Shown here piece by piece: positions 6,189 through 55,061 of a stretch of 64,000 nucleotides of DNA. The notes beneath the pieces were generated by a model. It did no database searches. It was not told the origin of the DNA and was given only the letters and a program-made list of their open reading frames with translations. The position numbers and the translations under genes were made by a program. Positions within the stretch are counted from its first letter, which is position 1; each line of letters starts with the position of its first letter. The stretch spans positions 124,001-188,000 of the IMG/VR virus record IMGVR_UViG_3300045973_000169. One strand, written 5' to 3'.

Positions 6189-6190
6189 AT

Positions 6191-6223
6191 TTAGGAACTC
6201 CATTTATCCTAAGTGTTAATAAC
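6191..6223 (-). promoter_or_regulatory. GTTATTAACA motif plus hairpin around the RBS of the endonuclease gene
   Basis: Minus strand: GTTATTAACA-C-TTAGGA-taaatGGAGt-TCCTAA-at-ATG. Confidence 0.5.
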
Positions 6224-32810: not shown

Positions 32811-34003
32811 TACTTAATCCTTATAGTTATAGGATTCGCAATTGGTTCAATTACAAGCTTCTCTTGAGCAGCTAATATGATTGTTTGATTTTCTCCATTA
32901 GAGACAGGGATAGATATTGGGTACCTAAATGATTCAGTCCCAAGGTATTTATTAACTAAGTTAAAGCTAATTGAAAGAACATCATTATTTATACCTTCAA
33001 TCATTCTAATTATATCTAATATATAGAAAGTATTATCAAGAAAATTATTTACATAACTTGATATTCTACTTTGGACTAATGCTATAAATGCAGTATTAGA
33101 TGTATATAGTTCTGGGTTCTTCATTGTCATAGTAAGATCTAATTGTAACCCTACATAATTAGGCTTAAGAACTTTATATTCTGCCCAAGGCGGTACAATT
33201 GTACTTATAATATCATGGACTTCATTGATTAAAGTATCTGGAGTTATTGGATTAATTGACTGGACATATATAGCAAAAGTTCCTCCGCCATTATATGATG
33301 GTACAATATCTACATATGAAACTCCAGGTACACCAGATGCTACATTAAAGATCCCTGCAGTATTTGTAGTTGCAAATGATCTCTGTCCATTGAACAAACG
33401 ATACCTATAGTTCTGATCAGTCTCATCTGGACGACCAGTTGATAGCATTGTAGGGTTAGTTATTAATAATGCTCCAGTGGTTGATTGAGCATAGTTTGTA
33501 AAGTAATGTCTATTAATAGTATTGATTGGAAGGACATCTGTCTTTCCTTGTATTAATTCTGCTGATATAAAACATTCTGAATCGTTTTTGCTTAGAGTGA
33601 TTTGTACAGTAGTAGCTAATCTTACAAGAGTCCCATCTGATAATGTTCCTTCAACCATAGTCCCTTGTGGAATAAGAATACTATTCCCGTTATTAATATC
33701 ACCAAATTTTCCTGATGATACATAAAATTTTAATGATTTCATTGTACTAGTAACTTCTGTAGGGAGAGCAAGTCTTTTCTCAATTCCAAAGAAAGATCCT
33801 ATCGTAGCTAACTTATCACCAGTTGAATTTAATAGACTGTTATCGGTGCTATCTTTTTCTAATAGTAATTCAACCTGTAATTGTTCATAGGCTATAGATT
33901 GTAAGATTTGATATGATTTAGTACCAGGGATTACATTAGATAATCCAGTACGTTGCTCTATTGCTTTTATTAATCTATCTAATCTATTTTGGTAATCTGC
34001 CAT
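32810..34003 (-). CDS. Baseplate J-like wedge protein
   Basis: TGDKLATIG.FFGI.KR, IPQGT, GRPDETDQNYRYRL, VPGVS.V, GGGTFAIYV. Confidence 0.85.
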   Translation of the reverse strand: MADYQNRLDRLIKAIEQRTGLSNVIPGTKSYQILQSIAYEQLQVELLLEKDSTDNSLLNSTGDKLATIGSFFGIEKRLALPTEVTSTMKSLKFYVSSGKFGDINNGNSILIPQGTMVEGTLSDGTLVRLATTVQITLSKNDSECFISAELIQGKTDVLPINTINRHYFTNYAQSTTGALLITNPTMLSTGRPDETDQNYRYRLFNGQRSFATTNTAGIFNVASGVPGVSYVDIVPSYNGGGTFAIYVQSINPITPDTLINEVHDIISTIVPPWAEYKVLKPNYVGLQLDLTMTMKNPELYTSNTAFIALVQSRISSYVNNFLDNTFYILDIIRMIEGINNDVLSISFNLVNKYLGTESFRYPISIPVSNGENQTIILAAQEKLVIEPIANPITIRIK

Positions 34004-35315: not shown

Positions 35316-38300
35316 TTAAACCTTACCTAATTCTTTTTTAAATTGCCAATAGTAACTTAGTACTGCATTTATGTGATCTGTATTTTTCATAAATTGAGGT
35401 CCATGTCCTGCATTGTATGCTGATACTGCTCTAGACACATCCCCATTTTCAGTTTGTATTAAATCAAATAAATACTTAACTCCATAGTCTATATTTGTTT
35501 TAGGATCAAATGGATCTTTACCATGGGTTCCATCCATAGAAGGATGAGCTTTCCCATTTATTTGCATTAAGCCTCTATCATTCTTGTCCTGTACCCCTAT
35601 TGCTTTTGGGTTCCATCCACTCTCTCTTTGTATCAATCCATAGACAACTTCTGGCTCAAGTATATATTTCTTTGTTCCATTTAGTTTACTTAATGCTTCA
35701 TCAACCATAGGCTTTAACTGGTTAAACATACTATCTTGTCTTACTATTTCTTCTGTGATCGAATATGATTTTAGTTTCATAGATCCACTAGGTGTTGATG
35801 CAAAAGCATTACCAGTAAATTGTATCCCTGGATCCAATATATCAGCAGCAAGTTTAACTGGTTCATAATCACTGAGAGAACTATATGCTTCATTAAATGC
35901 ATCTTTAGCATTTATAACCATACCCTTCATATGCATCCACATGTCATTATTTCTATAACCTTCAAGACCCGGCATTAACATAGAATCTTTAAACCAGATT
36001 GGCGAAATAACTACGATGTTTCCTTTTGTAGCAGCTTCTATTGCAAACATCTCAACTATAGATGGGAGTTCCATTACAACACTGAGAGCTAATAGCATTG
36101 ATACATTCCTTGCTAATGGTCCACCTAATAATTTCTTTCCACCTTCAATAAGTTTCGATCCAACAGCTTTTGTACCAGCAGAATATTTACCACCAAATAA
36201 ACCTTTAGGCTTCATCTTATTTAATAATACTTCATACTCTTTTTCTGTATTAACATTTATCTTAGTGTCTTTTAAAAGATCTTTCTGTGATTTTGATAAA
36301 TCTTTCCAAGCTGTTTCTTTCTTCGCTAATATCTTTTCCATCGAAGCTATTACTTGCTTATCTACAATAGTCTCGGCGGCAAGTGCTGCATCTACTGCAG
36401 CAGCCTTAAGTTCTCTTGTGTAATCGGCGGTCTGTGTAGCCCATCTATTTAAGAAGTCAGGCACTTTCTTAGGCATTAAGTTAGATAGATATTCTCCTGG
36501 AGTTATCCTTCTGAATACAGTTTTTACTGCTCCAGCAAAAACATCAGAGAAAACATATCTTCCACTTTGAACGACTGAATTACCAGCGGCAACAAGTCCT
36601 CTTTTTGCTCCACTTGATCCAACAACTGCTGCTGTTTTACCAGCATAAGCAAGTGCTGTATCTGCATAAACAGAATATTTCCATTCGACTACATTCTCTG
36701 CCCAGTTAAATTTATTAAGAGCATCTAGTGTATCAGTAGGTAAGCCATTGTATTTATTTACAAATGTCTCATTTTCTCTTGCTTGTGCAAAATGTTTATT
36801 TGCTTCAAGTAATCCATTAGCTACAAGTGAGAATCCTAATGATGTCCAAGGACCTGTTGTTGCTCCAAGGACTAATGATGTAGCATCTATTGCTAATCCT
36901 GCAGCTCCTCGTTCATTCCAATAGTTACTTACCTTACCAATTATATATTTACGTCTTAAATCACCAGCAGTTGAGTAAGCTGTATCATTTATCTTACAAA
37001 CCATATTAGGGACAATATGAGTAGTGAAACCCATTTCAGAATCAAACTTATGGATTACAGTTTCTACTTGAACCCAACCATACATCTTAGATACTTTATC
37101 ACAAATATAAATCTTATCATAAGGTTCAATCTTCGAGTTTCCTCTAAGAATAAGTGTCCCGCCATATAGACGTTCTACTCCTTCCTTAAGTAATCCAAGT
37201 GCATATTGTTGAGATAGTCTTTCATCATTTGTCCAGTCAATAACTGCGAACTTCCTTCTTAAGGCATGATTAAATATATCTGCATTAGCAACATACTCTT
37301 CTGGCTTACCAGACCCATCAGACGATTTTGAAATTACAACTGAATTCCATCCTCTTTCTGGAGTTGCTCTTACTCCATTATAAATTATATTATCCCATGA
37401 TGTTGCTATATGATGTTTCTGGAAAGGAACCATTGGTAAGATTCCAGTAGATAAAGTCTCAGGATCTATATTCCCTAGTGTGTCTCTTCTAGGACTATAG
37501 TCCATAATAGCTTTTCTGTATCTATCATTGTTATTTCCAGACTCTCTTGTTGCATCTGATCTCTCAATAAATGAAGGAGCCATTGCAAGAAGTGGATCAT
37601 CTGTTCTGAAATAATGGAAGTCGGGATCTCCTAAGAACAATGTAGACCTAGAGCCATAAGGTCTTACATCTAAAGCATATCCAGGATAGATCCTTTGGAT
37701 GTCTCTTAGCACATCCCAAACAGTCCTTTGGTTATTTGCTTTAAGTGTTACATTAGATCCAGAAGCACTTGCCCATATATCAAAAGCGAATATATTTGCA
37801 TCTATGGGATTATGTCCATTCTCAAGAGTGTCAGCCATATGTCTAAATAATTGAGTTGTAGCTTTATCTGCATTAAATAAATCTCCACGAAGTCTACCAT
37901 AAAGATTGCTAAATGTAGTCGAGAATCTTTCATTCCCTTTACATGACTCTCTGAATAAAGTCATTTTCCCAGCCTCAATCATCTTTCTACCATAATCACC
38001 TTCGGCTCCAAATGATGCATAGGCTAATGCTCCAACGCTTGTCCCGACTGCCGCTGCCGCTAAAGGAGATGCACCTATCATCCCAATAGCTGCTGCCCCA
38101 GCGAATGTTCCACCAGTGACTAATGCACTTGTACCCGTTCCAATAAGCCCAGTAATATTAGCTCTTGACATAATGAAGTTCATCAGGTTCTTATTTCTTC
38201 TGGAGAACTGTTCTATATGTGAACCAAACATTCTACCGAAATGGATAATGCTTGGATTGCTTCTTAACATCTGGCTAATTAAGTCACTAAAGTTTGAACC

Positions 38301-41300
38301 TGATAGTGATGAATTCTGAATAGATGAAGGTGTTGCTAATTCTCTTCCATCGCCTCTGCCTTCAATTTCATACATACCCATACCAGCAGCAGATAGATTA
38401 GTTATAGTCCCAATGAACACTGTATCTAAATATCTTGGATCAGAGTGATATCCTAGCTTAACACAGATTCTCATCCCTTGACGTAATGGACTTCTTCCAC
38501 CCATAAAGGAATACATTTCTTCTGTATTAATCTTAGATTCATCATCTTGGTTTCTAGTCTCAGTTATCATCTGAGGTTGACCAGTAACCTGATTAACTCC
38601 TTTATAACCATAGCGGCTATCATACATTGCTGAGGTTGTAGTCTTCCTTGGATCAACCACAACTCTACATTTTAGTATATGTGCAGGATTATTTCTATCT
38701 CTGATAACCATTAGGTCTTGGAGTAATCTAAAATCCCAGTAATCATCTAGTGCTTTATATTTATAGTCAGTTAAATTGTCATGTATGATATAAATCTTAT
38801 ATGTTGGATATGCATTCTGGATACCAATAGTTATAGCCTCTGAGTTATATACTTGTTGTAGTAGATAGTTTTCAGTTGATTCATCTATTTCTTCTCCTGC
38901 AGTTTCAATATAGTTTGCAGGGAGTGTATCAGAAATACCAGTTGTATTATATTTTGCTCTTAAGGCAATAAGTTTTGCATTATTTTCTTTCCATAATTTG
39001 GTGTCATTTACTGACTCATGCATTGCAAGTAATATCTTTTTCTCTTCTAGTTTAGCCCATTGCTTTTCGTTACTAATAGATGGAGTTACTGATTTTGGCT
39101 TTACAGAAGGAGTTACATCAGGAGCATTAACATCTTTATATGAAGCCCCTGTCACTCCACCTGGCTTACTAGAAATTGTCTTATGACAAATCTGTGCACT
39201 TAAAAACTTCTTAGCGTAGTCTTCTTGTTTTTCATTTACTTTCTGGTTTGATAATGGAGCATGTAAATTCTTCATGCTTGTTGCAGATGGTTTGTGTAGA
39301 ATACCATCAGATGTTAAGACACCCATTGATCTTCCATTATCATCATAGACACTTGAAATCCTACTCCCCATATTATTGTCAAATACATCAGTAGGGTCAT
39401 ATGGATTTTTAAGAGAATTTACATTGCCTGCAAATGACTCTTTCATATATTTAACAATAGCAGGGTCACCTTTAAAATGATGCTCATTAAACATACATGT
39501 AGAGAATTTATTTAAAGCAAAGTCTTTCGTTACAGGTTGTCCATCATTTTTAAGGATAGGGTAAAATAAACCAGCTCTATTCCCACTTTTATCATTAATC
39601 GGATTTCTACTATCAGATGCGAATGATGTTGTATCTTTTCTCATCGAAGGGATAGCAAGAGTACGTCCTATATTAAGACAACTATTCTCTTTCCCAATCA
39701 TTTCTTCTTGGAGACCTCTCCAGGTATCTTTAATATAGACAGTTTTATATGCATCTGTATCTGTCATATAGTCACCAATGAAATCCATCTCAGTCTTAAG
39801 CGTAGATACTTCATCTCCCATCATTCTTAATCTATTCTGAGAATACCAGTAACCTACTGAATTACTAAACATTTTATTATATGATATAAAGTTATCAACT
39901 CTATTAAACCATCTATGAGCTGCATAAGGTTTAGCTAAAAGAACTCCAGCTTGAAGATCTACTTTTATCTTCTCTCTCATTTTCTCGGTTATAACTTTAT
40001 CTAATACAGCAGTGCTTGTAACTGTTTCTTTTGTTAAAGCATTTACGTCTGCTGGCATTTTACTTACACTTAATTGTTTGCTATCCCCTCCAACCTTAAA
40101 TCCTCTTTTTAAAAACTCACCTTTTAAGAACTCAAGTTCTCCTAGAGAAATACCATTCAAATCAAATGTAGCTACATATCCATTAACTAACATATAATAT
40201 GTATTAAAGTTAGATAAGACCTTTTTAAGTCTACCTTTATCTGATTCTGATTTAACAACTAATGAAGTTAAGTCTAGTTCTATTTGAACTTCTCCAGGAG
40301 CTGAATATACTAACCCTGGATGTTCGGCTTCCCACTTCTTCTGCAATGCATTAAAATTCGATACAACATTATTTACGAATGCTCCATCAATTCCATCTGC
40401 ACTATTGGATATAGACTCAGCAAGTTTTGCTTGTTTCCATTGTAATCTATCGACTGCATGCTGTCCATTTACATTCTGAGTTACTGAATCTCTACTTTCA
40501 TAAAATGACTTAGGAGTCTCTGTTGTCTGCATTCCTTTTGTTTTAGATATTTCATCTAAAGCTTTATTTAGATCAGCAGCAAATCTTTGAGATAGGCCAT
40601 CAATATCTACGCTAGCAGAATTTCTTACTTTATAAAGCATTGAGTCTTTACGTTCTAACTTCTCCATATCCTTAGCCATGTCTTGATACTCAGGCATATC
40701 TAACAGATGAGTTATACGTTTTAAACCCCAGTAGTTATCAAACTTAACTGGGTCATTATCAGCTCTTGCTATAGATTCAAATATAGTCTTAGAGAATATT
40801 AAATTAACATCTGATAGATGTGGCTTCCCATCTACACTAGAGACTACAAGATTCTGTATAGTTAAAATATTAGCATCAGCAAGATCAAGGATAGGTGTCT
40901 GTACTAAGAATCTATTCTCAAAGTTACCAAATCTATCTGGAGTAATTGATTCTTTATATGATCTTAAAACCTGTCTTACTGCTTCAATGTCAGTTGTCTT
41001 AAAGTTAACAGAGACTTGTGTCTCACCAGGTCCAATGAATTGAGCTGTTGGGATAGCATGCTCAAGAACAGGAGTCCAAGCAAAGTTATTAGAGTAAGAC
41101 AAGGATACACTATGAGCATTTTCAGTTATACTACTTGCAGCTATAAGTTGGATACAGTCATTTTCTGTAAATCTTTTCCCTGCCGACTGTTGCATCAATT
41201 CCCAATGTTTATCGGAGAATGGATTATCTATCTTAAATATATTTATTTCAGATGGAGCATTATGATTAACATTATAAGCATGTAATTGTTTCTCATGTTC

Positions 41301-42917
41301 AATCATAAAATTATATGGATGAACTGATTCTTCTAAGTCAAATGTAGGATCAAATGCAGAGTCATCATCTTTTTTAGACTTCATTCTTATTACATCTCTT
41401 ACTTTAGCCATATCACCAAGAGTAGTAACTGCTTGGATTTCTTCATGATATCTAATATACTGTATCTTTTCAGAAGAGTTATTATGGAAGTAAGGCATAG
41501 GATTAAATAGAGACATCTCAAGACTACAACCAATACATCCTGGGTGTCCTTCTATTGTATAAAGAGTATAAGTATCCATAGTAACAGGGACACAGTATCC
41601 TGATAATGATTCATGTCCACTGCCATATTGAGTAGCAAGGAACTTATTCTCTTTGCTTAGTTTATGAAATATATCTTTAGATCTTATGATATTAATTGGT
41701 ACATATTTGAACTGTTGTAAGATCCTAAATAGATTATCATTTATTCCATGTTCGCCTTGGAATATTAAGTTAAGTTTTATAATTGTTCTGTTAGTGATAG
41801 AAGTCATTTGTGGTCTTGACTCCATACCTAATAGTGGAACATTTTGCGATGATCTTAACTGAGATATAAGTAAATGAGTTGGAGGAATATCAAGCCATAC
41901 ATCACCAATCTTAACCTTGTCAGCATTATCAGGATTACTTAAGTCATATTGTGTCTGCCCTCTCTTCTTGTTGAAGATAGGTTTTAGTTGAGATAGGTGA
42001 TTATAAAGTAAGTCAGACATATTTGTTTTAGCATCTTCGAATGCTTTAACTCTTGTCTGTACTTCTTGTGTATGAACTCCAAACCCTTTTTGCCCTGCAC
42101 ATTCTTGTGCTCTACGGAATGCATCTTGAGTCATGGAACTATCCCTGTCAGGGTTATTCCAGTTAACATGGTGCATAAGCACAGCACCAGTTTTAACCTG
42201 TAGAGCTTCCAAGTCAATCGCAGGGTTACCAAGGCCAAAGTCGATTTTATAACTTTGTACAGGACGTGGACCTATATCGTCATAGCCTAAATCACTAGGA
42301 ATAATTTTAGGGTATCCATTAGGATATACATCATTAGTGTTTCTTAGTGCCTGAGCATTAAGTAACATTTTCTCTGTAATTCTAGCTTGTATATTAGAAT
42401 AAGGATCAGACTGTCTAATGATTAGATAATCTTTATCACCTTCATGTCCAGCTTCATAATAGTATTCATTTTCATCACCCATTAAGGCTTTACTATTCTT
42501 ATAAGCTTTCCCTGTCTCAAAGGCATCGATTTTTCTTAAACGACCTTCATCAAAACGAGTTATTCTACCAGTAGAATCTTTTACACCACCAGGAGAGTCA
42601 CCGTCCTTAATCCATATCATTTCTTTTACTGCCTGTCCTTGCTCATTAACAATATCTCTGTCTAATGTAATAAGAGGAATATTAAACTTATTATCATAAG
42701 TAGGAAGATAGTTATCACCATAAGCTAATACAGGATCACTAATTCTAGGGTCACCAAATCTTTGGATAGCATCAAATTCACTTTTTTTATTATCTTTTAG
42801 ATTGGCTAACTTTTTATCATAATCATCAAAGTTAAACCCAAGTTTTTCTTTATCAAAAAATGGGATATTACTTATCAGTAAAAGTTCTTCTGTAGAAAGT
42901 CCATCGCAAGCTGACAT
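35316..42917 (-). CDS. Giant baseplate hub protein: N-terminal thermonuclease-like domain, hub domain, C-terminal lytic transglycosylase (SLT)
   Basis: SLT: IQRESGWNPKA, RGLMQIN, FDPKTNIDYGVKYL, AYNAG. Hub: GMRICVKLGY...VFIGTIT...IEGRG and GTLILRGNSKIEPYD...VETVIHKF...GFTT. SNase: DGD...RL..IDA.E. Confidence 0.8.
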   Translation of the reverse strand: MSACDGLSTEELLLISNIPFFDKEKLGFNFDDYDKKLANLKDNKKSEFDAIQRFGDPRISDPVLAYGDNYLPTYDNKFNIPLITLDRDIVNEQGQAVKEMIWIKDGDSPGGVKDSTGRITRFDEGRLRKIDAFETGKAYKNSKALMGDENEYYYEAGHEGDKDYLIIRQSDPYSNIQARITEKMLLNAQALRNTNDVYPNGYPKIIPSDLGYDDIGPRPVQSYKIDFGLGNPAIDLEALQVKTGAVLMHHVNWNNPDRDSSMTQDAFRRAQECAGQKGFGVHTQEVQTRVKAFEDAKTNMSDLLYNHLSQLKPIFNKKRGQTQYDLSNPDNADKVKIGDVWLDIPPTHLLISQLRSSQNVPLLGMESRPQMTSITNRTIIKLNLIFQGEHGINDNLFRILQQFKYVPINIIRSKDIFHKLSKENKFLATQYGSGHESLSGYCVPVTMDTYTLYTIEGHPGCIGCSLEMSLFNPMPYFHNNSSEKIQYIRYHEEIQAVTTLGDMAKVRDVIRMKSKKDDDSAFDPTFDLEESVHPYNFMIEHEKQLHAYNVNHNAPSEINIFKIDNPFSDKHWELMQQSAGKRFTENDCIQLIAASSITENAHSVSLSYSNNFAWTPVLEHAIPTAQFIGPGETQVSVNFKTTDIEAVRQVLRSYKESITPDRFGNFENRFLVQTPILDLADANILTIQNLVVSSVDGKPHLSDVNLIFSKTIFESIARADNDPVKFDNYWGLKRITHLLDMPEYQDMAKDMEKLERKDSMLYKVRNSASVDIDGLSQRFAADLNKALDEISKTKGMQTTETPKSFYESRDSVTQNVNGQHAVDRLQWKQAKLAESISNSADGIDGAFVNNVVSNFNALQKKWEAEHPGLVYSAPGEVQIELDLTSLVVKSESDKGRLKKVLSNFNTYYMLVNGYVATFDLNGISLGELEFLKGEFLKRGFKVGGDSKQLSVSKMPADVNALTKETVTSTAVLDKVITEKMREKIKVDLQAGVLLAKPYAAHRWFNRVDNFISYNKMFSNSVGYWYSQNRLRMMGDEVSTLKTEMDFIGDYMTDTDAYKTVYIKDTWRGLQEEMIGKENSCLNIGRTLAIPSMRKDTTSFASDSRNPINDKSGNRAGLFYPILKNDGQPVTKDFALNKFSTCMFNEHHFKGDPAIVKYMKESFAGNVNSLKNPYDPTDVFDNNMGSRISSVYDDNGRSMGVLTSDGILHKPSATSMKNLHAPLSNQKVNEKQEDYAKKFLSAQICHKTISSKPGGVTGASYKDVNAPDVTPSVKPKSVTPSISNEKQWAKLEEKKILLAMHESVNDTKLWKENNAKLIALRAKYNTTGISDTLPANYIETAGEEIDESTENYLLQQVYNSEAITIGIQNAYPTYKIYIIHDNLTDYKYKALDDYWDFRLLQDLMVIRDRNNPAHILKCRVVVDPRKTTTSAMYDSRYGYKGVNQVTGQPQMITETRNQDDESKINTEEMYSFMGGRSPLRQGMRICVKLGYHSDPRYLDTVFIGTITNLSAAGMGMYEIEGRGDGRELATPSSIQNSSLSGSNFSDLISQMLRSNPSIIHFGRMFGSHIEQFSRRNKNLMNFIMSRANITGLIGTGTSALVTGGTFAGAAAIGMIGASPLAAAAVGTSVGALAYASFGAEGDYGRKMIEAGKMTLFRESCKGNERFSTTFSNLYGRLRGDLFNADKATTQLFRHMADTLENGHNPIDANIFAFDIWASASGSNVTLKANNQRTVWDVLRDIQRIYPGYALDVRPYGSRSTLFLGDPDFHYFRTDDPLLAMAPSFIERSDATRESGNNNDRYRKAIMDYSPRRDTLGNIDPETLSTGILPMVPFQKHHIATSWDNIIYNGVRATPERGWNSVVISKSSDGSGKPEEYVANADIFNHALRRKFAVIDWTNDERLSQQYALGLLKEGVERLYGGTLILRGNSKIEPYDKIYICDKVSKMYGWVQVETVIHKFDSEMGFTTHIVPNMVCKINDTAYSTAGDLRRKYIIGKVSNYWNERGAAGLAIDATSLVLGATTGPWTSLGFSLVANGLLEANKHFAQARENETFVNKYNGLPTDTLDALNKFNWAENVVEWKYSVYADTALAYAGKTAAVVGSSGAKRGLVAAGNSVVQSGRYVFSDVFAGAVKTVFRRITPGEYLSNLMPKKVPDFLNRWATQTADYTRELKAAAVDAALAAETIVDKQVIASMEKILAKKETAWKDLSKSQKDLLKDTKINVNTEKEYEVLLNKMKPKGLFGGKYSAGTKAVGSKLIEGGKKLLGGPLARNVSMLLALSVVMELPSIVEMFAIEAATKGNIVVISPIWFKDSMLMPGLEGYRNNDMWMHMKGMVINAKDAFNEAYSSLSDYEPVKLAADILDPGIQFTGNAFASTPSGSMKLKSYSITEEIVRQDSMFNQLKPMVDEALSKLNGTKKYILEPEVVYGLIQRESGWNPKAIGVQDKNDRGLMQINGKAHPSMDGTHGKDPFDPKTNIDYGVKYLFDLIQTENGDVSRAVSAYNAGHGPQFMKNTDHINAVLSYYWQFKKELGKV

Positions 42918-42920
42918 TAA

Positions 42921-45900
42921 TTAACCTCTGTATTGGTGCATATCTGATTTATAAGGATCAGTCCCATCCGAACGAACAGAGACTGTATTGTTAAGTCGTC
43001 CACCGAAAGCAGCGGAGATAGATGAAATTGAATCATTATGGTTTTCTCGTCTGTCTGTTAATAAACCCATGTGCATATTATTCCCCATAGATGATCCCAT
43101 CTGTCTTGGTGTTCCCATATATCCTCTATGTGAATCTCCAAATGATGGATTAGATACAGAAGGAAGATCATTTATATCTTCTGGAGTCCCATCCCCACCA
43201 AGTACATTTAGTGCAGTCATTGCAACTAAACCTGCTCCAAGAGCAAGTCCAACTTTCCCTGGAGTAATTTTACCCATAAGATTTCTTACTTGCTCTGCTC
43301 CATAAATTTCTCTCTTAGATATCCCTTTTACAATAGATCCATGTAGTTCAGGATTAATAAATGACTCATGACCTAAGTGTCTCTGTAAGTTTGAGTCTCC
43401 AAGAAGACCTTTAAAGAATCCTTCTTCGCTATCTCTATGTTGTCTTATAACTGCATCATAGCTTTCAGAAGCAGAGAAGTGACCTGTCTTCTTTAGGTCT
43501 TCTATAAAGTCGAAATAACTATGAGATGTAGTATATCCCATATTCTTAAAAGCTTCGGTTTCATTTGTGAATGTCATTCCTTTTGTCTTCTCTACATAAG
43601 CAGCAGCTCTAGTCTTAGCTAGTTCTGGAGTAAACCCTGGAAGTAACTTTAATGCATTCTCTACCTCAGTTGCTCCTTCACGCTTAAACATTGTATGTAT
43701 ATTAGTTAATGTTTCGAATTCTTTCTTAACGTTATTCTTTGACCCTTCACGTAAGAAAGCAGGAACTTCACCATTCCTATTCTGTACTGCATTTAATGTA
43801 TTGTATAGATGTAATGCACCAACTTCACCTTGTAACTCTGCAAACCCAGTTAGAGCTTTCTCTTTAGTTAGCTCTCCCATGTTGGCAACCATGTGATCTA
43901 TTTTGTTGGTTACACCAAGCATCTTCTCTACGTGCTTTGAAGATATAGACCCCTGGACAATTTCTTTAGCAGGGATATCTATTGCATGAATCATTGCATT
44001 CATCTGTTGTTCTTCAGATAGAGATGAATTTCCAATAATCTTGCTCATCATTGCATTAGTCATCTCTTTGGTTCTTACATGCGCTGAACCAGTAGTTCGT
44101 TTAGTTAACCAAGCTGCAGTAACAGATTCTTTTTCAGAATATGCCATAGCCTTAGTCAAATCATCTAATCTGTCTGCATGTGGGAGGAAGTAATTCTTAG
44201 ATTCATTATTGAAAATAGCCTGTAATGAATTCTTCTTATTTTCTTTTATCGCATTGATAACATCATGTGACATGCTTTGTTCTTTTAAGATTCTATCATA
44301 TACATTAGATCTGTTTTGAGTATGGAATAAGAATTTAGCAAATGCAATATCACCGTCATTATCAGCATTCATTAATGTTCTTAGGCGATGTCCGAATGCT
44401 ATAAACTTACCACCTTCGACATATCCTTTATCTGTAGCAAATGTGAAAGATAAAGCTTTAGAAGAAGAATAGATATTAGGGAAACGGTCTACAAATGTAG
44501 ACTGTCCCGCTCTCTCTATTAATGAAGCTGCTTTATCATGTTGTCCACTTTGGACTAACGAATGTAATAAGTCATAATCTTTAACAGATTGTTGAGCTAT
44601 ACTATGACCTACTTGTTTAAATTTATCTCCTGAAGCTATATCAGCATAATGCTTTTCGAATATATTCCCTTTACCAAATCTATCTTCTAAGAAAGAACTA
44701 ATTGTTTTATTATTATCCTTAGCTGTTATATATGATTTCTGTAATTCATCAGCGATAGAAGATGCATATGTTTCTTTGTCAATTACAGTAGTGTTACCAA
44801 ATAGATGGTCTAGCTTAGATCCTTCTTCAATACTGCCAATTAATTCTTTATTATTAATAAGATGAGTATCGGCAAATACTTTATCTAGTGAAGCTCCCTC
44901 AACTTGGAAAGCGCCTCTTCTTAAGTATCCTTCTTTAGATGCCATATTACCAGTCGCTCTAATATCAATTAGCTTCTGATAGTTACTACTGCTAATCACT
45001 CCACCATTATTCTTTGCATCAACTAATATCTGTGTTTCTAATCTAACATCTCTAGAAACAGCTAACCTTTCTTCGTCATCTAAGTATTGTGACTTCTGAT
45101 AAAAATCTCCAGATCCGAAATAAGCTAATCTCCCATCTTCAGTTGCAACACCAAATCCTTTGGCATTAACATCTGGGTTAAGAAATGATTTAGTCATTAA
45201 ATAAGGATCATCTATATTGCCGCCTTTGATTATCTTACCATCGGCAAGCATCTCTTCAAGCCCTTCTTTATTCAGGACTTTAACTCCAGTCTTCTCCATC
45301 TGTCCAGCTAACTTAGGATCTTTCATGAAGTTCATATACATCTGACCTTCAGATAGAATCTTCCTTGAATCAGTTAAACTACTTCCTGCAAGCTCTTCCA
45401 TTACTTTACTTGGAAGCAGATATGGCATATCATTGACACCCATTCTATAAACATTATGTCCTATCCCTTGAGTATATAAACTCTCTTGAGGAAATATAGT
45501 TGACATGATATGGAACTGATTTATATTCTTAGTTTTATCACCAAGGCTCTGTAAATGATCTGTCATTAAATCAGCAGCATCATTATAAGAGATATCTTGT
45601 GAGCCGCCTCTCATATGTCCTAGTAATCTAGTCATTAAGTTTATCTGTTCTTTCATCGGGCCAGCCCCTTGGTCGAACTGTAATCTCCCTTGTCGTGCTA
45701 GCTGAGTAAGATTCCCAGTAAATCCTCCTACATATTTAGATAAACTTTTTGTAAGGTTCTCATTTAATACAACATCTTTTTCTGCAGCATAAGCGTGTCC
45801 AGCTACCATTGACTGTAATGTAGTTAACATACTCCCTGCGCCTTTACCTGCAATTATACCATCAATCCCATCTTTACCTATAGATGAAGGAAATACTTTC

Positions 45901-47900
45901 TTGAAGAAATCGAGAGACATATCGAAACTAACATTCTTGCCATACAGAGCAGCTGTTTCTTGTGGCATTAATTGAGCAGCACTTCTTAGATCATGATAAG
46001 TTCCTACTTTAGTAAGGGCCTCAACACTTTGACCATAGAATGTTTTCTCAATTGTTCCTTCTCCGAATCCTCTTAATGTTCTTGCAATATCTTCTTTAGT
46101 CTGGATAACCTTAGTATTTGTTGTAACTAAACCATTAGAATGAGACATAGCTCTATCATATGAAGCAGCAGTATCTATCTGATTATTGGCAGTACCTAAC
46201 CCAACTACAGTCCCAGGTCTTAGTTCGATCCTTTCAACTTGGCTTAATGTTTTTGTATCATTATATAGGTCAAATAGAGTCTTATCACTGTGTGATTCTC
46301 CACCGATTATATATGTAGGATTCATTAATTTAGTCATAGCCTGTTTTTCACTTGGTAATCCACCCCAAGTATATCCAGTCTTTGCTTTCATCTCTATGGC
46401 TCTAGAAACCCTCATATTATCTTTTAAACCAGGGGCGAATTGGATAACCTCTTCTGTATGTGGATTTATTACCCCTAGCATTGTTGCATGCCCTTGGTCA
46501 TAAACCTGTCCATAAGCTAAAGGATTAGTCCCTTGAGCTAAATGACTCCAAACTAAAGGTAGGTTCTTATCAATATTTTCACCAAAACGTCCATGGAATT
46601 TAAAGTCTTTCATAGATTTGAGTGAGTCGATACCATTCCCTTTAGTCATGGTTGGGAAGAATGTAGATGTCCACATAGCCCCTTGACTCTGAGAAACATT
46701 ATATCCAATGAATTCATTTATCTGTTGTTGTATTGGAGAATGGATACCTCTAAATTTATTATTAGCATTACCTCTTGCTACTTCATTCATTCCAGCTACT
46801 GCATTAATGGCTTCTGGTTCTATTGAGTGTAGACTATTTAATGAAACATTAGACTCCATCGCTCCCCTAAGTCCAGCATTTTCCATTTCATGTAAACCAT
46901 AGATATCATTCTTTACTGTACGCCCTAACCTTTGGATCTTCGCCGGTGAGTTCCCTTCTGCCCACAATAGATGACTGCTAAGGTTTTTAAATAGTTGTTT
47001 GATGCCATGCATCTCATGGAAATCTTTAACTATTCTTTCAGCATTAGTCTTGCTCTCAATCATCTTTACATGAGCAGCAGCATCTTTCCCTTTAGTCCCT
47101 TTTCTTATAATATCATCATAATGGAGAACATCTCTTACATCTCTGGCATTCCCAGAGTTAGCTGTAATTAATGCTTTCTGATTATTAGAAATCATATCTA
47201 AGACATATTCATTATAAGACATGAATTCAGATCCAACTACATTCTTACCTTCAAGTGTTGGTCTCCTAAAGTAAGGAGCCACATAATGTGCTCCTTCTTT
47301 ATTTCTTACAATCCAAGCTCCAGTCTCTTCGTCGAATTTTGCTAAAGGAACTTCTACGCTATGATTACCTATCTTTACACTTAAAGATGTACTAGCTCCA
47401 ACAGCATCTTCTCTCGTAGCTGTAATCCCTAGTTTCTTTAAGTTTTCTAATACCTTAGACTGGACATCTACATTATCAATAGAATAGACACCTTTGTTTA
47501 GGTTAACTCCATGGACAGTAGATCCATTAGAGAATCTTGCTATTTCTTCAGCGGTTATATCAATTCCAGTCTCTTTGAGTCCAACACTGTTTATGCTATT
47601 AATCTTCTCAATCATAGAAGTGTCTCTATGAGCATAAGTAGCTTTCTTCATCTCCATCCCACGCTTTAAGCCTGTGTCTATAGAGTCTGCTATATTAGAT
47701 ATACGTCTCTGTAATGGGGTTTGACTTGGGTTAGTTAATGGCATAACCTTATCTAATATATTAGTTAGTTGCCCACCTAACCAACCTTCTGGCTCTCTAT
47801 TAACTTTATATAAAGTATATGCTGAAGCACCTAGTATCCCAGTCATCCCTATCTTCGGGACGATTGAATCATTGTATTGTTCATAAGGTCTATTAGACAT
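42921..47900 (-). CDS. Putative single-chain two-barrel (beta/beta'-like) virion RNA polymerase
   Basis: NADNDGD (aa 1178-1184) preceded by DRFP (R1139) and KEGYLR (K989); Q-x6-H (Q1316); upstream beta-like KDNMRVS and K-x4-H-x2-R (K631). Confidence 0.72.
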   Translation of the reverse strand: MSNRPYEQYNDSIVPKIGMTGILGASAYTLYKVNREPEGWLGGQLTNILDKVMPLTNPSQTPLQRRISNIADSIDTGLKRGMEMKKATYAHRDTSMIEKINSINSVGLKETGIDITAEEIARFSNGSTVHGVNLNKGVYSIDNVDVQSKVLENLKKLGITATREDAVGASTSLSVKIGNHSVEVPLAKFDEETGAWIVRNKEGAHYVAPYFRRPTLEGKNVVGSEFMSYNEYVLDMISNNQKALITANSGNARDVRDVLHYDDIIRKGTKGKDAAAHVKMIESKTNAERIVKDFHEMHGIKQLFKNLSSHLLWAEGNSPAKIQRLGRTVKNDIYGLHEMENAGLRGAMESNVSLNSLHSIEPEAINAVAGMNEVARGNANNKFRGIHSPIQQQINEFIGYNVSQSQGAMWTSTFFPTMTKGNGIDSLKSMKDFKFHGRFGENIDKNLPLVWSHLAQGTNPLAYGQVYDQGHATMLGVINPHTEEVIQFAPGLKDNMRVSRAIEMKAKTGYTWGGLPSEKQAMTKLMNPTYIIGGESHSDKTLFDLYNDTKTLSQVERIELRPGTVVGLGTANNQIDTAASYDRAMSHSNGLVTTNTKVIQTKEDIARTLRGFGEGTIEKTFYGQSVEALTKVGTYHDLRSAAQLMPQETAALYGKNVSFDMSLDFFKKVFPSSIGKDGIDGIIAGKGAGSMLTTLQSMVAGHAYAAEKDVVLNENLTKSLSKYVGGFTGNLTQLARQGRLQFDQGAGPMKEQINLMTRLLGHMRGGSQDISYNDAADLMTDHLQSLGDKTKNINQFHIMSTIFPQESLYTQGIGHNVYRMGVNDMPYLLPSKVMEELAGSSLTDSRKILSEGQMYMNFMKDPKLAGQMEKTGVKVLNKEGLEEMLADGKIIKGGNIDDPYLMTKSFLNPDVNAKGFGVATEDGRLAYFGSGDFYQKSQYLDDEERLAVSRDVRLETQILVDAKNNGGVISSSNYQKLIDIRATGNMASKEGYLRRGAFQVEGASLDKVFADTHLINNKELIGSIEEGSKLDHLFGNTTVIDKETYASSIADELQKSYITAKDNNKTISSFLEDRFGKGNIFEKHYADIASGDKFKQVGHSIAQQSVKDYDLLHSLVQSGQHDKAASLIERAGQSTFVDRFPNIYSSSKALSFTFATDKGYVEGGKFIAFGHRLRTLMNADNDGDIAFAKFLFHTQNRSNVYDRILKEQSMSHDVINAIKENKKNSLQAIFNNESKNYFLPHADRLDDLTKAMAYSEKESVTAAWLTKRTTGSAHVRTKEMTNAMMSKIIGNSSLSEEQQMNAMIHAIDIPAKEIVQGSISSKHVEKMLGVTNKIDHMVANMGELTKEKALTGFAELQGEVGALHLYNTLNAVQNRNGEVPAFLREGSKNNVKKEFETLTNIHTMFKREGATEVENALKLLPGFTPELAKTRAAAYVEKTKGMTFTNETEAFKNMGYTTSHSYFDFIEDLKKTGHFSASESYDAVIRQHRDSEEGFFKGLLGDSNLQRHLGHESFINPELHGSIVKGISKREIYGAEQVRNLMGKITPGKVGLALGAGLVAMTALNVLGGDGTPEDINDLPSVSNPSFGDSHRGYMGTPRQMGSSMGNNMHMGLLTDRRENHNDSISSISAAFGGRLNNTVSVRSDGTDPYKSDMHQYRG

Positions 47901-47902
47901 TG

Positions 47903-50900
47903 TTAATACCCATAACTAAACTGTGAGTGGATTAGATCACCATATTGAGACTGTGATCTTTGTAAGTAATCTGCATGTCCATTTGTTTCGATATCTATAC
48001 TTGTCATAGTATTCGGTGACATGGTTGGGAACATCTGTATATTTGAAGCTCTATCATCTTGTATTATATATGAAACTATTCTGTTAATAGTTGAATTTGT
48101 TGTTGATCCTGCTGACTTTAATTGGTGTGATGCTAAATTAGCACCATGATCAAATACTGCTTCTCTCAATTTATTATCAAAGAAACCATAATCTTGTATA
48201 TTCTCTCCACCTTCTTTAAGTGCTAATAACTCTACATTTTCAATATTAACATCAGGGGAATAGCCTATCCAATCTTCTTTAGGCATATCATGAGACTTCA
48301 TATATTCTCTTACATACCTAGCTCTTATCCAATCAGCTTTATTAGCATTTCCTCCAGTTTCATTCATATACATCTTACTCTCTTGACCTGACATTCCCCA
48401 ACCTTCGGTTTCCTGTAGGTTCATATAAGCTTGTTGTACATTTATATCATCTGAAGATTCAGCTAACTTCTTGCTCCATATTGCATTGTATAATCTTCTA
48501 GCACCTCTAGGGATATACTTCATGATCTTCCCGCGTTTCTTTGGGTCAGGCTCATTAGCAAATCTAGAGTAATAAGCTCTTTCATTTTCAGGCAAAGCAG
48601 CTAATTCATCTCTTGTATTATCATCAGTTGGGTCAGCCCCTATCATTGTAGAACGCCACATATTATGATAGTAAGTTGCATCTTCTTCATTGCCAGTTTT
48701 AGATGCTTGTACTGCTAACATCTTATATTTGACATATTTAAGAATATCCCAATACTCTTGGTTTTGTCTTCTTTCAACAGTGAATCCTGGTAGGTGATCT
48801 ACACCAAACCATTGGTGCATAAAAGAAGATATAGCAGGAGCCAATAGATGTTGGATAGGGTGTGACCATAACTTAACTTCACGGTTAAATACTTGGTTAG
48901 TTAAGTAATTATCTAAATAGTCTTTTTTAGGGATTAACTTATTAGCCCAGAAGGTCTGGTCATTAGAAATAGTCCCCCAGTATTTAGCCATTGCTCTCCC
49001 AGCATATCCAACTTCATCCTGTTGCATATTGAATTCTGAAAGATTTCCAGTATTAGTTCTTGCTGCTCCTGCTTCTATTAGATCTGAACTAAGATCTCCT
49101 ATTAATGCTTCAGTCCCAGATTCAGAATTATTCATCTGATCTGCAGATGGAGCTTGAAAAGAAATACTCTGACCAATGCCAATACGTGATGCTATAATTT
49201 GTGATGTCCTTGCTCTTGCCTCTTCTGCTGCTCTTGCTAATTCTGATGTTGAACTAAACTTTTCTTTTAATAGTAAATTAGCTCTTATATCCGCTTCTGA
49301 GGTTGAAACACCAGCGATCCTATAGCGAGTATCATCACCTTCAAGAGTAAAGCTTCCTGACTCATCTACGGAGCTTACAGTGCCATTAACTGTATCAGTA
49401 TTTAGTCTATAGTCGTACTCTGATTTAGATGTATAAAGTTTATCTTTGAGTTGTCTTACTTGGTCTAATGTTTCATAGAATCTTTGCTCATCGCCTAAAG
49501 ATAATTGGTCTTGTAATGTTTGATGCATTACTTTATGAGATTGATTTCTAAACTCTTGTGTAAATGGAGCTATGGACTGTAATATCTCTAGCTTTTCAGG
49601 ATCAGGATATTGTTCTAGTTCTTTCCCTTTTAATTCTGGGTAAAGATTCTCCCAACCTTTTCTTGTAGAATATAACCATCCTAAAGGAGTATTATCAAAT
49701 GTAGTCCCATGAGTTACATCATTAGTATATCTTTTAAATGCATCTTTCTTAGTGCTTTCTTGAGGGATCCAAGATACACCATTAAGTTCATTTGGTAAGT
49801 CATTGATTTTCCAATCCTTCATAGGATATGGGAATATACGTCTTAAGAATTCTCCACCTACTCCAGAAATATCTCCTAGCTTCCATCCCCACATCTGTTG
49901 AGCTGGGTTATAGAACTCTCCTGCATTTTCTTTATAAGGAACAAACTGATCTGTAGATTCACCAGTTATATATTGTTTCGCAGTCTCATATGCGAATCCA
50001 GTGAAACCAATTAAGTCATGGTATTGTCTAGACCATCTATCCATAAGATCTTTATTAGATCCTTCTGACTGCATCCCAATAGCTCTAGCTAATTCCATAT
50101 TAGATGCACCAGCGCCCCTCATCCCAATTGTAGTAGGAGTATAAGGTTGAGGTTGTGTCCCTTGACTAGTTAGTTCATGATATACTCTAGTTGGTTTAAT
50201 TAAACGTCCTATTGTTGCTGCTATAGGTTGACCAATTAAAGGGATGTTTGCCCCAAGTGGAGCTGACTCATATACTGGCTGATCTAACTTATGATAATTC
50301 TCTAAGATGTATGGTTTATATAATCCAAATGTTGCATTATGTAAAGCTCTCTCCCAATAGTTAGGATATACAACTCCTCTATTCTCATAGTCAGATTCAA
50401 TTACACTAAACATATGCTTTCTAAATTGGATAGGAGTTCCACCCTCATAAGGAGAAGAAGACAATAACCAACCTCTATACTTACGAACTGCTACTTCCTT
50501 ATCACCAGCATACTCAGCTTTTCTTTCTTGATATGTTTTATTAGAACCTAAAACCCCAGGGAGAAATGGTAACATTGGTACCATCATAGCTGCGAAAATA
50601 GCCTTCTTAGGATTTCTTAGTGCCCAACCTGCATATCTTTCAAAGTGAGTTTTAGTTAAAGCACCAGCATAAGCTTCTGTTCTTAGAGCATTTTTTATGA
50701 AACTATTCTTACCGAACCTAGTCCCAACATTTCTTAGATATTGCTTTATACCAACTGGGCCTTTATTGTAAAGGTATTCTCCAATTTTAAAGAATGAAGT
50801 TGCTGTTAGTGCAGGAGCTAATATGCCTAACCTAGTAGATCCTGGAGCCACTTTTTCTTGCTTCTTTGTCAGTCTTGTGAATCCAGTTATATCTGATATC

Positions 50901-54335: not shown

Positions 54336-55061
54336 TTATTGAATATCTTTTAGTATTAGTTCTATATTTTTCATTTCCCAATAAGGAATTTCTAATAACT
54401 TAATATTGTTATCTTTACAATACTGCTTTTTAGTACTATCTCTTTGTTGTAAACTTACAAGAGCCTCATTACCTCCCCAGTATTTAACAGACCTATAATG
54501 TTGCATCCCATTAAACTCTATACAAACCTTATGGTTTGGTAGGTAGAAGTCAAATCTCAATGGGAGCCTTTGGTCTTTAAAGAATAAATTATCAAATGTT
54601 TTTTGCTGAATATAATCAATGTAATTATTCTCTAGCCATTTTTTAATTCTTATTTCGCCTTTTGAAATATTACACTTAGGACATCCTTGTCCTTTTAAGT
54701 GATCATTTGGGGTTTGCCAAAAACTCCCATGCTTATGGCATATAATACAAACCTTAATTTTGCTTTGTTTGTATTCAACTAAAGAATAATCAAATTTATT
54801 TTCATGGATAGTTTTTGCTTTTCCTAAGAACTCAGGCTTAGACATTTTTGAACTATTCCCAATTATAGAATAATAACACTTTGGGCAACCATTTCCTTTT
54901 AAATGATTCTCAGGGGCCTGTTCAAATTCTCCATGCAAATTACAAACAATAAGAACTTTTGTTTTATTATTTATATATTCAACCTTAGAGTAGTCATATT
55001 TAAAATTATGGATTTGATTAGCTTTATCAATAAGGTCATTAGCAGTTAATCTTTTAGGCAT
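54336..55061 (-). CDS. Putative homing endonuclease (DUF723-type Zn repeats + Vsr/DUF559-like nuclease)
   Basis: IHNFKYDYSKVEY...C..HG.F.Q.P..HLKG.GCPKC twice, then RFDFYLP...CIEFNGMQH; clear paralogue of 5451-6188. Confidence 0.8.
   Translation of the reverse strand: MPKRLTANDLIDKANQIHNFKYDYSKVEYINNKTKVLIVCNLHGEFEQAPENHLKGNGCPKCYYSIIGNSSKMSKPEFLGKAKTIHENKFDYSLVEYKQSKIKVCIICHKHGSFWQTPNDHLKGQGCPKCNISKGEIRIKKWLENNYIDYIQQKTFDNLFFKDQRLPLRFDFYLPNHKVCIEFNGMQHYRSVKYWGGNEALVSLQQRDSTKKQYCKDNNIKLLEIPYWEMKNIELILKDIQ

What the first reader, a model, noticed from the sequence alone, without database searches (positions are those of the whole stretch)
42070..42620. Thermonuclease (SNase)-like domain with apparently intact catalytic residues on the baseplate hub
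Seen: KDGDS (D107), RLRKIDAFE (R126, D131, E134), DDIGPRP, EALQVKTG and FRRAQECAGQKGFGVH. Knowledge: the spacing matches staphylococcal nuclease D21/R35/D40/E43 and its C-terminal helix. Inference: a Ca-dependent nuclease on the same chain as an SLT, which could clear extracellular or biofilm DNA or be delivered into the cell.
Basis: partly seen in the sequence, partly recalled or inferred. Interest (0 to 1): 0.66.

Follow-up and report, generated by a model that had tools for sequence, protein, structure and literature searches.

The report
Nuclease domain on giant phage hub
A 2,533-residue tail-hub protein of an uncultured 207-kb pond phage starts with a divergent staphylococcal-nuclease-type domain that keeps all five catalytic residues; a domain of this kind on such hub proteins was reported in 2007, and I found no test of what it does.

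Summary
All five strings lie at aa 104-282 of one ORF (window 35316-42917, minus strand, 2,533 aa), and the residue numbers are right.

Pfam's SNase model does not detect this protein directly. A 12-member family profile that includes it matches solved staphylococcal nuclease at E 6e-10 over residues 15-143. The window protein plus its closest relative aligns to the more canonical members by hhalign at E 2e-8. An AlphaFold model (pLDDT 63) has SNase as its best fold (Z 9.4-9.7). The top 12 of 48,161 representative chains are all SNase-fold.

D107, R126, D131, E134 and R218 align with SNase D21, R35, D40, E43 and R87. All five are kept in 7 of 14 relatives and have decayed in the rest.

The host protein is a "hyperplastic" gp27/gp44-like baseplate hub of the Bacillus phage 0305phi8-36 lineage, ending in an SLT lytic transglycosylase. 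Hardies et al. (2007) already reported an SNase domain at the N-terminus of such a hub, with unknown purpose. I also found Pfam-level SNase domains, not annotated as such, on the hubs of Acinetobacter phage ME3 and Bacillus phage Edson.

This is a new, divergent member of a known but untested kind. Nuclease activity and role are inferred, not shown.

The parts
35316..42917 (-). P0001, a 2,533-aa giant hub protein. Order of parts: N-terminal leader, SNase-like domain, conserved core, variable region, gp27/gp44-like hub region, hydrophobic segments, C-terminal SLT.
   Evidence: It is a single uninterrupted ORF. AGAGG lies 7 nt upstream of the ATG, and the start is 3 nt after the upstream gene's stop. 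Full-length homologues of 2,319-3,197 aa exist.
42069..42623 (-). SNase-fold (thermonuclease-like OB-fold) domain, aa 99-283.
   Evidence: The AF2 model aligns to SNase residues 13-141 with Z 9.7, rmsd 3.6 A over 121 residues. Z is 9.4 in the unbiased search. The family profile matches PDB SNase at E 6e-10, and hhalign to canonical family members gives E 2e-8.
42594..42605 (-). DGDS, aa 105-108. D107 is the counterpart of the SNase Ca ligand D21.
42516..42542 (-). RLRKIDAFE, aa 126-134. R126, D131 and E134 are the counterparts of SNase R35, D40 and E43.
   Evidence: These residues are invariant between P0001 and P0003, which share 32-34% domain identity.
42408..42515 (-). Lineage-specific insertion, about aa 135-170, directly after the E43 counterpart at the position of the SNase omega-loop. 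A second, smaller insertion follows helix 1 (about aa 195-207).
   Evidence: These columns are gapped in all family members except P0001 and P0003. The model has pLDDT below 50 over model residues 59-79.
42261..42281 (-). DDIGPRP, aa 213-219. R218 is the counterpart of SNase R87.
42072..42209 (-). Counterparts of SNase helix 2 (EALQVKTG) and helix 3 (FRRAQECAGQKGFGVH), aa 237-282.
   Evidence: Profile alignment to SNase and model helices H160-166 and H188-201.
40638..42020 (-). Conserved core of unknown fold, aa 300-760, containing the KIGDVWLDIPPTHL block. It is the best family marker.
   Evidence: Column identity is 34-50% across 12 homologues, against about 20% in the SNase domain.
36918..38885 (-). 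gp27/gp44/gpD-like baseplate hub region, aa 1345-2000, with a Gly/Ala-rich hydrophobic insert at about aa 1598-1628.
   Evidence: tblastn of aa 1722-2024 hits the ME3 'baseplate hub protein', a KLEB27-3 'putative baseplate protein' and others at E 7e-15 to 3e-10. PHROG 20474 and 8809 match. The atlas look-alikes are Mu gp44/GpP hub clusters at 0.93. There is no Pfam or PDB profile hit.
35397..35675 (-). C-terminal SLT lytic transglycosylase domain, aa 2415-2507.
   Evidence: Pfam PF01464, E 3.5e-20, 72 bits.
42921..47900 (-). P0002, a 1,659-aa protein in the position of the tape-measure gene, with a C-terminal hydrophobic segment. It is context, not part of the nuclease.
   Evidence: The position is analogous to orf146 in 0305phi8-36 (PMC2147016).
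32810..34003 (-). Baseplate J-like wedge protein downstream. It is context.
   Evidence: Pfam PF04865, E 4.3e-14, and PHROG 6.

Best explanation
Residues about 95-290 of the giant hub protein form a divergent staphylococcal-nuclease (thermonuclease) OB-fold domain. It keeps the two Ca-binding aspartates (D107, D131), the general base (E134) and both transition-state arginines (R126, R218). It carries two lineage-specific insertions, one of them at the omega-loop next to the active site.

The domain is one of the exchangeable enzymatic decorations that the 0305phi8-36 lineage of jumbo myoviruses fuses to its oversized gp27/gp44-like hub. The others are SLT, glucosaminidase, tail lysozyme and M23.

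The most likely working is that the domain is carried in the virion at the hub or tail tip and acts as a Ca-dependent phosphodiesterase outside the cytoplasm. It would cut extracellular or envelope-associated nucleic acid while the C-terminal SLT cuts peptidoglycan at the start of infection.

What is shown: homology, fold, residue conservation, and fusion to a hub with SLT. What is inferred: presence in the virion, catalytic activity, Ca dependence, substrate and site of action.
For: Homology and fold:
- A family profile that includes P0001 hits 288 PDB chains at E<=1. The 60 listed are all SNase or thermonuclease, best E 6e-10, covering SNase residues 15-143.
- hhalign of P0001+P0003 against five more canonical orthologous domains gives 95% probability and E 2e-8. 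Against four domains that Pfam itself recognises it gives E 3.8e-5.
- Orthologous N-terminal domains reach Pfam SNase: P0011 by precomputed annotation, three of the 12 family members at E<=1 with best 5.3e-7, and P0017 at 22.8 bits, above the cut-off.
- The AF2 model built on the 12-sequence alignment has pTM 0.64. The Foldseek hits shown are SNase, apart from SND1 SN-domain chains, at probability 0.82-0.99. VIA-align gives Z 9.7. In the unbiased search the first 12 of 48,161 representatives are all SNase-fold and the next fold has Z<=4.4.

Residues:
- All five catalytic positions are kept in P0001, P0003, P0007, P0009, P0010 and P0011 and in P0017, at only 14-34% domain identity.

Context:
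- The same chain carries SLT.
- In Acinetobacter phage ME3 the hub's SNase domain (Pfam E 4.7e-14) sits about 60 residues before an M23 peptidase. This places the nuclease among envelope-attacking modules.
- SNase-type enzymes need millimolar Ca and are typically secreted (textbook knowledge of the family).
- Hardies et al. 2007 argued that such hub-fused domains occupy the place of the T4 tail lysozyme (PMC2147016).
Against: - Pfam SNase, PHROGs and phmmer against the PDB give nothing for P0001 itself, nor does the P0001+P0003 pair against the PDB.
- The model is of middling confidence (pLDDT 63) and was built from an alignment that contains the more canonical members. It is therefore not independent of the sequence evidence.
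- The SNase nucleotide-binding residues K84 and Y85 correspond to D214 and I215 here, and the Y113/Y115 region is not kept.
- Half of the family has lost catalytic residues, so the hub does not need the activity.
- The domain is the least conserved part of the protein.
- There are no proteomic, structural or enzymatic data for this phage, and its host is unknown.
Confidence: 0.5

Rival explanations
1. The domain is a catalytically silent SN-like OB-fold, used as a structural, assembly or nucleic-acid or ligand-binding module of the hub. The SN domains of Tudor-SN and of extended Tudor proteins work this way. On this reading the retained residues are a relic.
For: Seven of 14 family members have lost one or more catalytic residues while keeping the domain. 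K84/Y85 and Y113/Y115 counterparts are absent. A roughly 35-residue insertion sits next to the active site. Non-catalytic SN-fold domains rank just below SNase in the fold search.
Against: All five residues are invariant between P0001 and P0003 at 32-34% identity and complete in seven lineages. About 29% of columns are invariant between the pair, so all five coinciding by chance is roughly 0.002 (my estimate). A relic would be expected to decay, as it did in P0012-P0016.
Confidence: 0.25
2. The domain is an active nuclease that is ejected through the tail with the hub and the tape-measure-position protein. It then acts inside the cell (periplasm or cytoplasm) on host DNA or RNA or on nucleotide signals, as an early takeover or counter-defence effector.
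For: P0001 and the upstream P0002 carry hydrophobic segments typical of ejected, membrane-inserting tail proteins. The domain lies at the N-terminus, far from the hub region. The catalytic set is intact.
Against: SNase-type catalysis needs Ca far above cytoplasmic levels (family knowledge). In ME3 the domain sits beside a wall hydrolase. Hub proteins of the gp27 class are generally not known to enter the cytoplasm. There is no direct evidence here either way.
Confidence: 0.18
3. It is a chance motif resemblance, with no real relation to SNase.
For: There is no direct Pfam or PDB sequence hit for P0001.
Against: Profile, profile-profile and fold results all converge on SNase alone. The motif occurs in 5 of 20,000 shuffles. 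Positional orthologues pass Pfam's own cut-off.
Confidence: 0.03

Closest known systems
Staphylococcal nuclease / thermonuclease family (Pfam PF00565; PDB 1STN, 1SNC and others)
   Same: The OB-fold barrel plus three helices is predicted (Z 9.4-9.7). The counterparts of D21, R35, D40, E43 and R87 are present with the exact R-x4-D-x2-E spacing. The helix 2 and helix 3 sequence patterns are kept.
   Different: It is not detected by the Pfam model. The first hairpin is five residues longer. There is an insertion of about 35 residues at the omega-loop and a second one after helix 1. K84/Y85 and Y113/Y115 are not kept. There is no signal peptide, and the domain is fused to a 2,500-aa virion protein rather than secreted alone.
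Hyperplastic T4-gp27-like hub of Bacillus phage 0305phi8-36 (gp147) and its BtI1/BwK1 prophage homologues (Hardies, Thomas and Serwer 2007, PMC2147016)
   Same: It is a giant hub protein just downstream of a giant tape-measure-position gene and upstream of baseplate J. A conserved assembly core is decorated with exchangeable enzymatic domains. The BtI1 homologue was reported to carry an N-terminal staphylococcal-nuclease domain, exactly the arrangement seen here.
   Different: gp147 itself has a transglycosylase at the N-terminus and NlpC/M23 at the C-terminus. Here the SNase is N-terminal and the SLT C-terminal. Sequence similarity to cultured members is limited to aa 1722-2024 at 23-27%. I could not align BtI1 itself because it is not in the collections searched.
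Acinetobacter phage vB_AbaM_ME3 'baseplate hub protein' ME3_37 and Bacillus phage Edson GAKEdson_0910
   Same: Both are proteins of about 2,320 aa with the same gene-order context, similar to P0001 aa 1722-2024 (ME3_37 is annotated 'baseplate hub protein', Edson 0910 'hypothetical protein'). Both carry Pfam-significant SNase domains: ME3 aa 1126-1241 at E 4.7e-14, and Edson aa 175-264 at E 9e-6.
   Different: In ME3 the SNase is internal and adjoins an M23 peptidase, and the conserved core starts at the N-terminus. Neither record annotates the nuclease. The N-terminal 420 aa of the window's family finds nothing in GenBank phages by tblastn.
Tudor-SN (SND1) SN domains and extended Tudor domains
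   Same: They have the same fold (Z 5-8.1) and show that SN-like domains can serve as non-catalytic binding modules.
   Different: These are eukaryotic, and most lack the catalytic residues that P0001 keeps.

Membership tests
SNase / thermonuclease (PF00565) | Scores above the Pfam gathering threshold | tested here: not met
   There is no hit at E<=1 on P0001, on aa 60-330, or on aa 77-295, and none in the whole 207-kb genome at E<=10. Orthologous domains do pass: P0017 at 22.8 bits against the 21-bit cut-off, ME3_37 at 53 bits and Edson at 26.5 bits. P0011 carries PF00565 by precomputed annotation. Three of the 12 family members match at E<=1, best 5.3e-7.
SNase / thermonuclease (PF00565) | Profile-level homology to bona fide SNase | tested here: met
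   The 12-sequence profile matches PDB SNase at E 6e-10 across residues 15-143. hhalign of P0001+P0003 against canonical members gives E 2e-8 at 95% probability, and E 3.8e-5 at 71% against Pfam-positive domains. The P0001+P0003 pair alone against the PDB gives no hit.
SNase / thermonuclease (PF00565) | OB-fold five-stranded barrel with three helices | tested here: met
   The AF2 model has pLDDT 63 and pTM 0.64. It aligns to SNase at Z 9.7, rmsd 3.6 A over 121 of 129 residues. SNase-fold chains fill ranks 1-12 of 48,161. The model confidence is only moderate.
SNase / thermonuclease (PF00565) | Ca ligands D21 and D40 | tested here: met
   D107 and D131 align to them.
SNase / thermonuclease (PF00565) | General base E43 and arginines R35 and R87 | tested here: met
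   E134, R126 and R218 align to them. They are invariant in P0003 and complete in 7 of 14 relatives.
SNase / thermonuclease (PF00565) | Nucleotide-contacting K84, Y85, Y113 and Y115 | tested here: not met
   The aligned positions are D214 and I215, and a His-rich stretch (aa 248-253) replaces the Tyr pair. These residues are not universal in the family, so this weakens the claim of identical substrate binding, not the claim of membership.
SNase / thermonuclease (PF00565) | Ca-dependent endo/exonuclease activity yielding 3'-phosphates | not testable with these tools
   This needs an enzyme assay.
Hyperplastic gp27/gp44-like baseplate hub (0305phi8-36 gp147 type) | gp27/gpD/gp44-homologous hub region | tested here: inconclusive
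   tblastn of aa 1722-2024 hits annotated hub or baseplate proteins at E 7e-15 to 3e-10. PHROG 20474 and 8809 match. The atlas feature look-alikes are Mu gp44/GpP hub clusters at 0.93.
Hyperplastic gp27/gp44-like baseplate hub (0305phi8-36 gp147 type) | Gene order: giant tape-measure-position gene, then hub, then small baseplate genes, then baseplate J | tested here: met
   The window shows this order. ME3, Edson, KLEB27-3 and MTATph1 show the same order, as described in PMC2147016.
Hyperplastic gp27/gp44-like baseplate hub (0305phi8-36 gp147 type) | Fused, exchangeable wall-degrading domains | tested here: met
   P0001 and P0007 carry SLT, P0003 a glucosaminidase, P0011 Phage_lysozyme2, and ME3 an M23.
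Hyperplastic gp27/gp44-like baseplate hub (0305phi8-36 gp147 type) | Presence in the virion | not testable with these tools
   This is an uncultured phage from a pond metagenome, so it needs proteomics or cryo-EM of a cultured relative.

The most novel reading that the evidence does not exclude
The hub-borne SNase is a working enzyme that leaves the virion with the tail-lumen proteins. It acts inside the host envelope or cytoplasm as an injected effector against host nucleic acids or nucleotide-based defence signals.

The neighbouring protein in the tape-measure position has a conserved (N)ADxDGD motif that recalls the metal site of two-barrel RNA polymerases. Together the two would form an injected enzymatic toolkit, analogous to the cargo proteins of N4 and crAss-like phages, but delivered through a contractile tail.
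Probability: 0.08. Interest if true: 0.75.

Novelty: new member of a known kind. Interest (0 to 1): 0.4.

Why it matters
Phage tail hubs are known to carry wall-cutting enzymes, but a nuclease at the same place is unexplained. It was flagged in 2007 as 'not obvious why', and I found no experimental follow-up in the searchable literature.

This window adds a divergent member that escapes Pfam. It comes with a 14-member family in which the catalytic set is complete in half and decayed in the other half. That split is a natural experiment for asking whether the activity matters.

Two cultured phages, ME3 and Edson, carry Pfam-level SNase domains on their hubs. They make the question directly testable: whether jumbo phages use a virion nuclease to get through eDNA-rich matrices, or to attack the host. 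The answer bears on phage penetration of biofilms and on annotation of giant 'hypothetical' tail proteins.

Tried and rejected
**Searches on the SNase domain that found nothing**
- Direct Pfam, PHROG and phmmer-PDB searches of P0001 and its N-terminal part gave no SNase hit. A whole-genome Pfam SNase search found none.
- The single-sequence AF2 fold was useless, with pLDDT 34.
- The word-indexed protein search on aa 60-330 found only the protein itself.
- The exhaustive search of 1.84 billion representatives found one true relative, P0003. It also returned three weak hits (P0004-P0006) that I judged to be repeat-protein artefacts and discarded.
- tblastn of the N-terminal 420 aa of P0001 and of P0011 against GenBank phages found no match.
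- The metagenome-contig scan with the conserved-core alignment found no relative.
- The profile of P0001+P0003 alone against the PDB gave only a chance carbonic-anhydrase row at E 0.2.

**Hub region and upstream protein**
- The hub-region profile found nothing in the PDB or Pfam.
- I tested P0002 as an RNA polymerase. Pfam, PHROG, PF00623 and PF05183 genome searches, phmmer-PDB and the atlas all gave nothing usable. The phmmer-PDB rows for IpaH ligases at E 0.04-0.05 are taken as chance.

- Searches for a virion nuclease on phage tails found only the 2007 paper.
- I did not run complex prediction, because no binding claim is made.
Full report
**Setting**

The window is bases 124001-188000 of a 206,638-bp IMG/VR virus record. 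The stretch occurs in one pond-metagenome run. A 63-kb Logan contig from that run covers 40000-44000 without a single difference, although the run may be the source sample.

The genes are almost all on the minus strand and form the structural module of a contractile-tailed jumbo phage:
- a sheath-like protein at 58984-61494,
- three giant ORFs of 1,948, 1,659 and 2,533 aa,
- three small ORFs,
- a Baseplate_J protein at 32810-34003,
- tail-spike and tail-fibre proteins.

**The observation**

The finding lies in the 2,533-aa ORF at 35316-42917 (P0001). The R126-x4-D131-x2-E134 spacing is exactly that of SNase R35/D40/E43. D107 to R126 is five residues longer than D21 to R35.

The composite motif occurs once in all six frames of the window. 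It occurs in 5 of 20,000 shuffles of the protein.

**Is it an SNase domain?**

Pfam SNase gives no hit on the protein, on the excised region, or anywhere in the genome. PHROGs and phmmer against the PDB are also blank. A single-sequence fold was uninformative.

The way forward was relatives:
- The exhaustive representative search found one real homologue, P0003, of 2,525 aa (E 2.5e-13).
- Scans of IMG/VR found three loci on other contigs.
- A word search seeded from one of those loci found nine more full-length proteins of 2,319-3,197 aa.

All share a strongly conserved core after the N-terminal domain, and they align end to end.

Their N-terminal domains are mostly shorter and more canonical than that of P0001:
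- P0011 carries a precomputed Pfam SNase annotation.
- Three of the twelve match Pfam SNase at E<=1, best 5.3e-7.
- P0017 passes the gathering threshold over the whole model.

A profile of the 12 aligned domains, P0001 included, hits 288 PDB chains at E<=1. The 60 listed are all SNase or thermonuclease, best E 6e-10, spanning SNase residues 15-143. P0001+P0003 as a pair aligns to five canonical members at 95% probability and E 2e-8. Against four domains that Pfam itself recognises, two of them from cultured phages, it aligns at E 3.8e-5.

An AF2 model of aa 77-295 built on the 12-row alignment has pLDDT 63 and pTM 0.64.
- The 50 Foldseek hits shown are SNase, apart from three SND1 SN-domain chains, at probability 0.82-0.99.
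- VIA-align gives Z 9.7, rmsd 3.6 A over 121 of 129 residues.
- In a search that does not depend on Foldseek, ranks 1-12 of 48,161 chains are SNase, Tudor-SN SN domains and extended Tudor domains. The next fold scores Z<=4.4.

**Catalytic residues**

Through the family alignment and its alignment to SNase, the correspondences are:

| P0001 | SNase | Role (from family knowledge) |
|---|---|---|
| D107 | D21 | Ca ligand |
| R126 | R35 | transition-state arginine |
| D131 | D40 | Ca ligand |
| E134 | E43 | general base |
| R218 | R87 | transition-state arginine |

All five are invariant in P0003 at 32-34% domain identity. The set is complete in P0007, P0009, P0010, P0011 and P0017. P0008 has lost D40. 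P0012-P0016 and P0018 are progressively degenerate.

K84/Y85 and the Y113/Y115 pair are not kept in P0001.

P0001 and P0003 share two insertions. One, at about aa 135-170, follows E134 directly. From my knowledge of the SNase literature, that is the position of the flexible omega-loop, which tolerates deletion in the Delta+PHS variants. The model is of low confidence there.

**What the protein is**

- The C-terminus is an SLT domain (E 3.5e-20).
- Residues 1722-2024 match the giant 'baseplate hub protein' of Acinetobacter phage ME3. They also match equivalents in Bacillus phages Edson, WH1 and KLEB27-3 and in Moorella phage MTATph1, all with the same gene order.
- A feature-based atlas search of aa 1345-2000 returns Mu gp44/GpP hub clusters.
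- Pfam and a PDB profile search do not confirm the hub region, so I rate the hub assignment as likely but not proven here.
- Hydrophobic segments lie at about aa 1598-1628 and 2263-2294.

The C-terminal lytic domain differs among homologues (SLT, glucosaminidase, Phage_lysozyme2). The SNase domain is the least conserved part of the chain. Both facts fit exchangeable peripheral modules on a conserved assembly core.

**Prior knowledge**

Hardies, Thomas and Serwer (2007, PMC2147016) described exactly this class, a 'hyperplastic homologue of the T4 gp27 hub' in Bacillus phage 0305phi8-36. [quoted passage not shown]

I add the following. ME3_37 carries a strong Pfam SNase domain at aa 1126-1241 (E 4.7e-14), about 60 residues before an M23 peptidase. 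Edson's hub-position giant protein carries one at aa 175-264 (E 9e-6). Neither is annotated as such. I found no paper that tests such a domain.

**Mechanism**

My confidence, step by step:
- SNase-fold domain homologous to thermonucleases: about 0.95.
- Catalytically competent nuclease: about 0.65. The full catalytic set is conserved across deep divergence, but secondary binding residues are missing, there is an insertion at the active site, and sister lineages have lost activity.
- Carried on the virion hub: about 0.8, by homology and gene order.

For site of action I favour outside the cytoplasm. SNase chemistry needs high Ca, and in ME3 the domain neighbours a wall hydrolase. The target could be eDNA or other envelope-associated nucleic acid. 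This is inference. Delivery into the cell, and a purely structural role, remain open rivals.

**Verdict**

The feature is a divergent new member of a known, never-tested kind. It is of moderate interest, mainly because it now comes with a family showing both retention and decay of the active site, and with cultured proxies for experiment.

Noticed in passing
window 42921-47900 (-); the motif is at aa 1178-1184, window 44349-44369. Also L001:2193-7433, L002:3-2321 and L003:1-2052.: The 1,659-aa protein just upstream of the hub sits where 0305phi8-36 has its tape measure. It carries NADNDGD. An (N)ADxDGD motif is kept in all three homologues found, at only 24-29% identity. It resembles the Mg-binding signature of two-barrel RNA polymerases (beta-prime, YonO, crAss gp66, QDE-1). 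Pfam, PHROG, PDB, atlas and genome searches with PF00623 and PF05183 gave no support. The fold was not tested.
   Followed up: partly
L005:3772-10761 (Acinetobacter phage ME3, ME3_37) and L006:3586-10545 (Bacillus phage Edson, GAKEdson_0910): The giant hub-position proteins of two cultured jumbo phages carry Pfam-significant SNase domains that their records do not annotate. In ME3 the domain is at aa 1126-1241, next to Peptidase_M23 at 1301-1401. In Edson it is at aa 175-264.
   Followed up: yes
P0001 aa 2415-2507 (window 35397-35675), P0003 aa 2389-2521, and P0011: The C-terminal wall-degrading domain is swapped among otherwise collinear homologues. It is SLT in P0001 and P0007, a glucosaminidase in P0003, and Phage_lysozyme2 in P0011.
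   Followed up: partly
window 54336-55061 (-) and 5451-6203 (-): Two paralogous HNH/homing-endonuclease genes (PHROG 559, E 3e-61 and 8e-57) are embedded in the structural module.
   Followed up: no
window 56942-58207 (-) and 58297-58929 (-): Two adjacent ORFs both match the same N-terminal part of the major-head-protein PHROG 9206 (profile positions 44-181 and 21-167). This looks like a tandem duplication of a head-protein domain rather than a split gene.
   Followed up: no
window 19790-20653 (-): A 287-aa ORF among the tail and fibre genes matches PHROG 1706, labelled 'CRISPR/Cas system associated' (E 1.4e-17).
   Followed up: no
window 47903-53749 (-): A third giant ORF (1,948 aa), upstream of P0002, has no Pfam or PHROG match at all.
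   Followed up: no
window 6441-12953 (-): A 2,170-aa tail-fibre-like protein has several internal repeated matches to PHROG 25191, 3904 and 25032.
   Followed up: no
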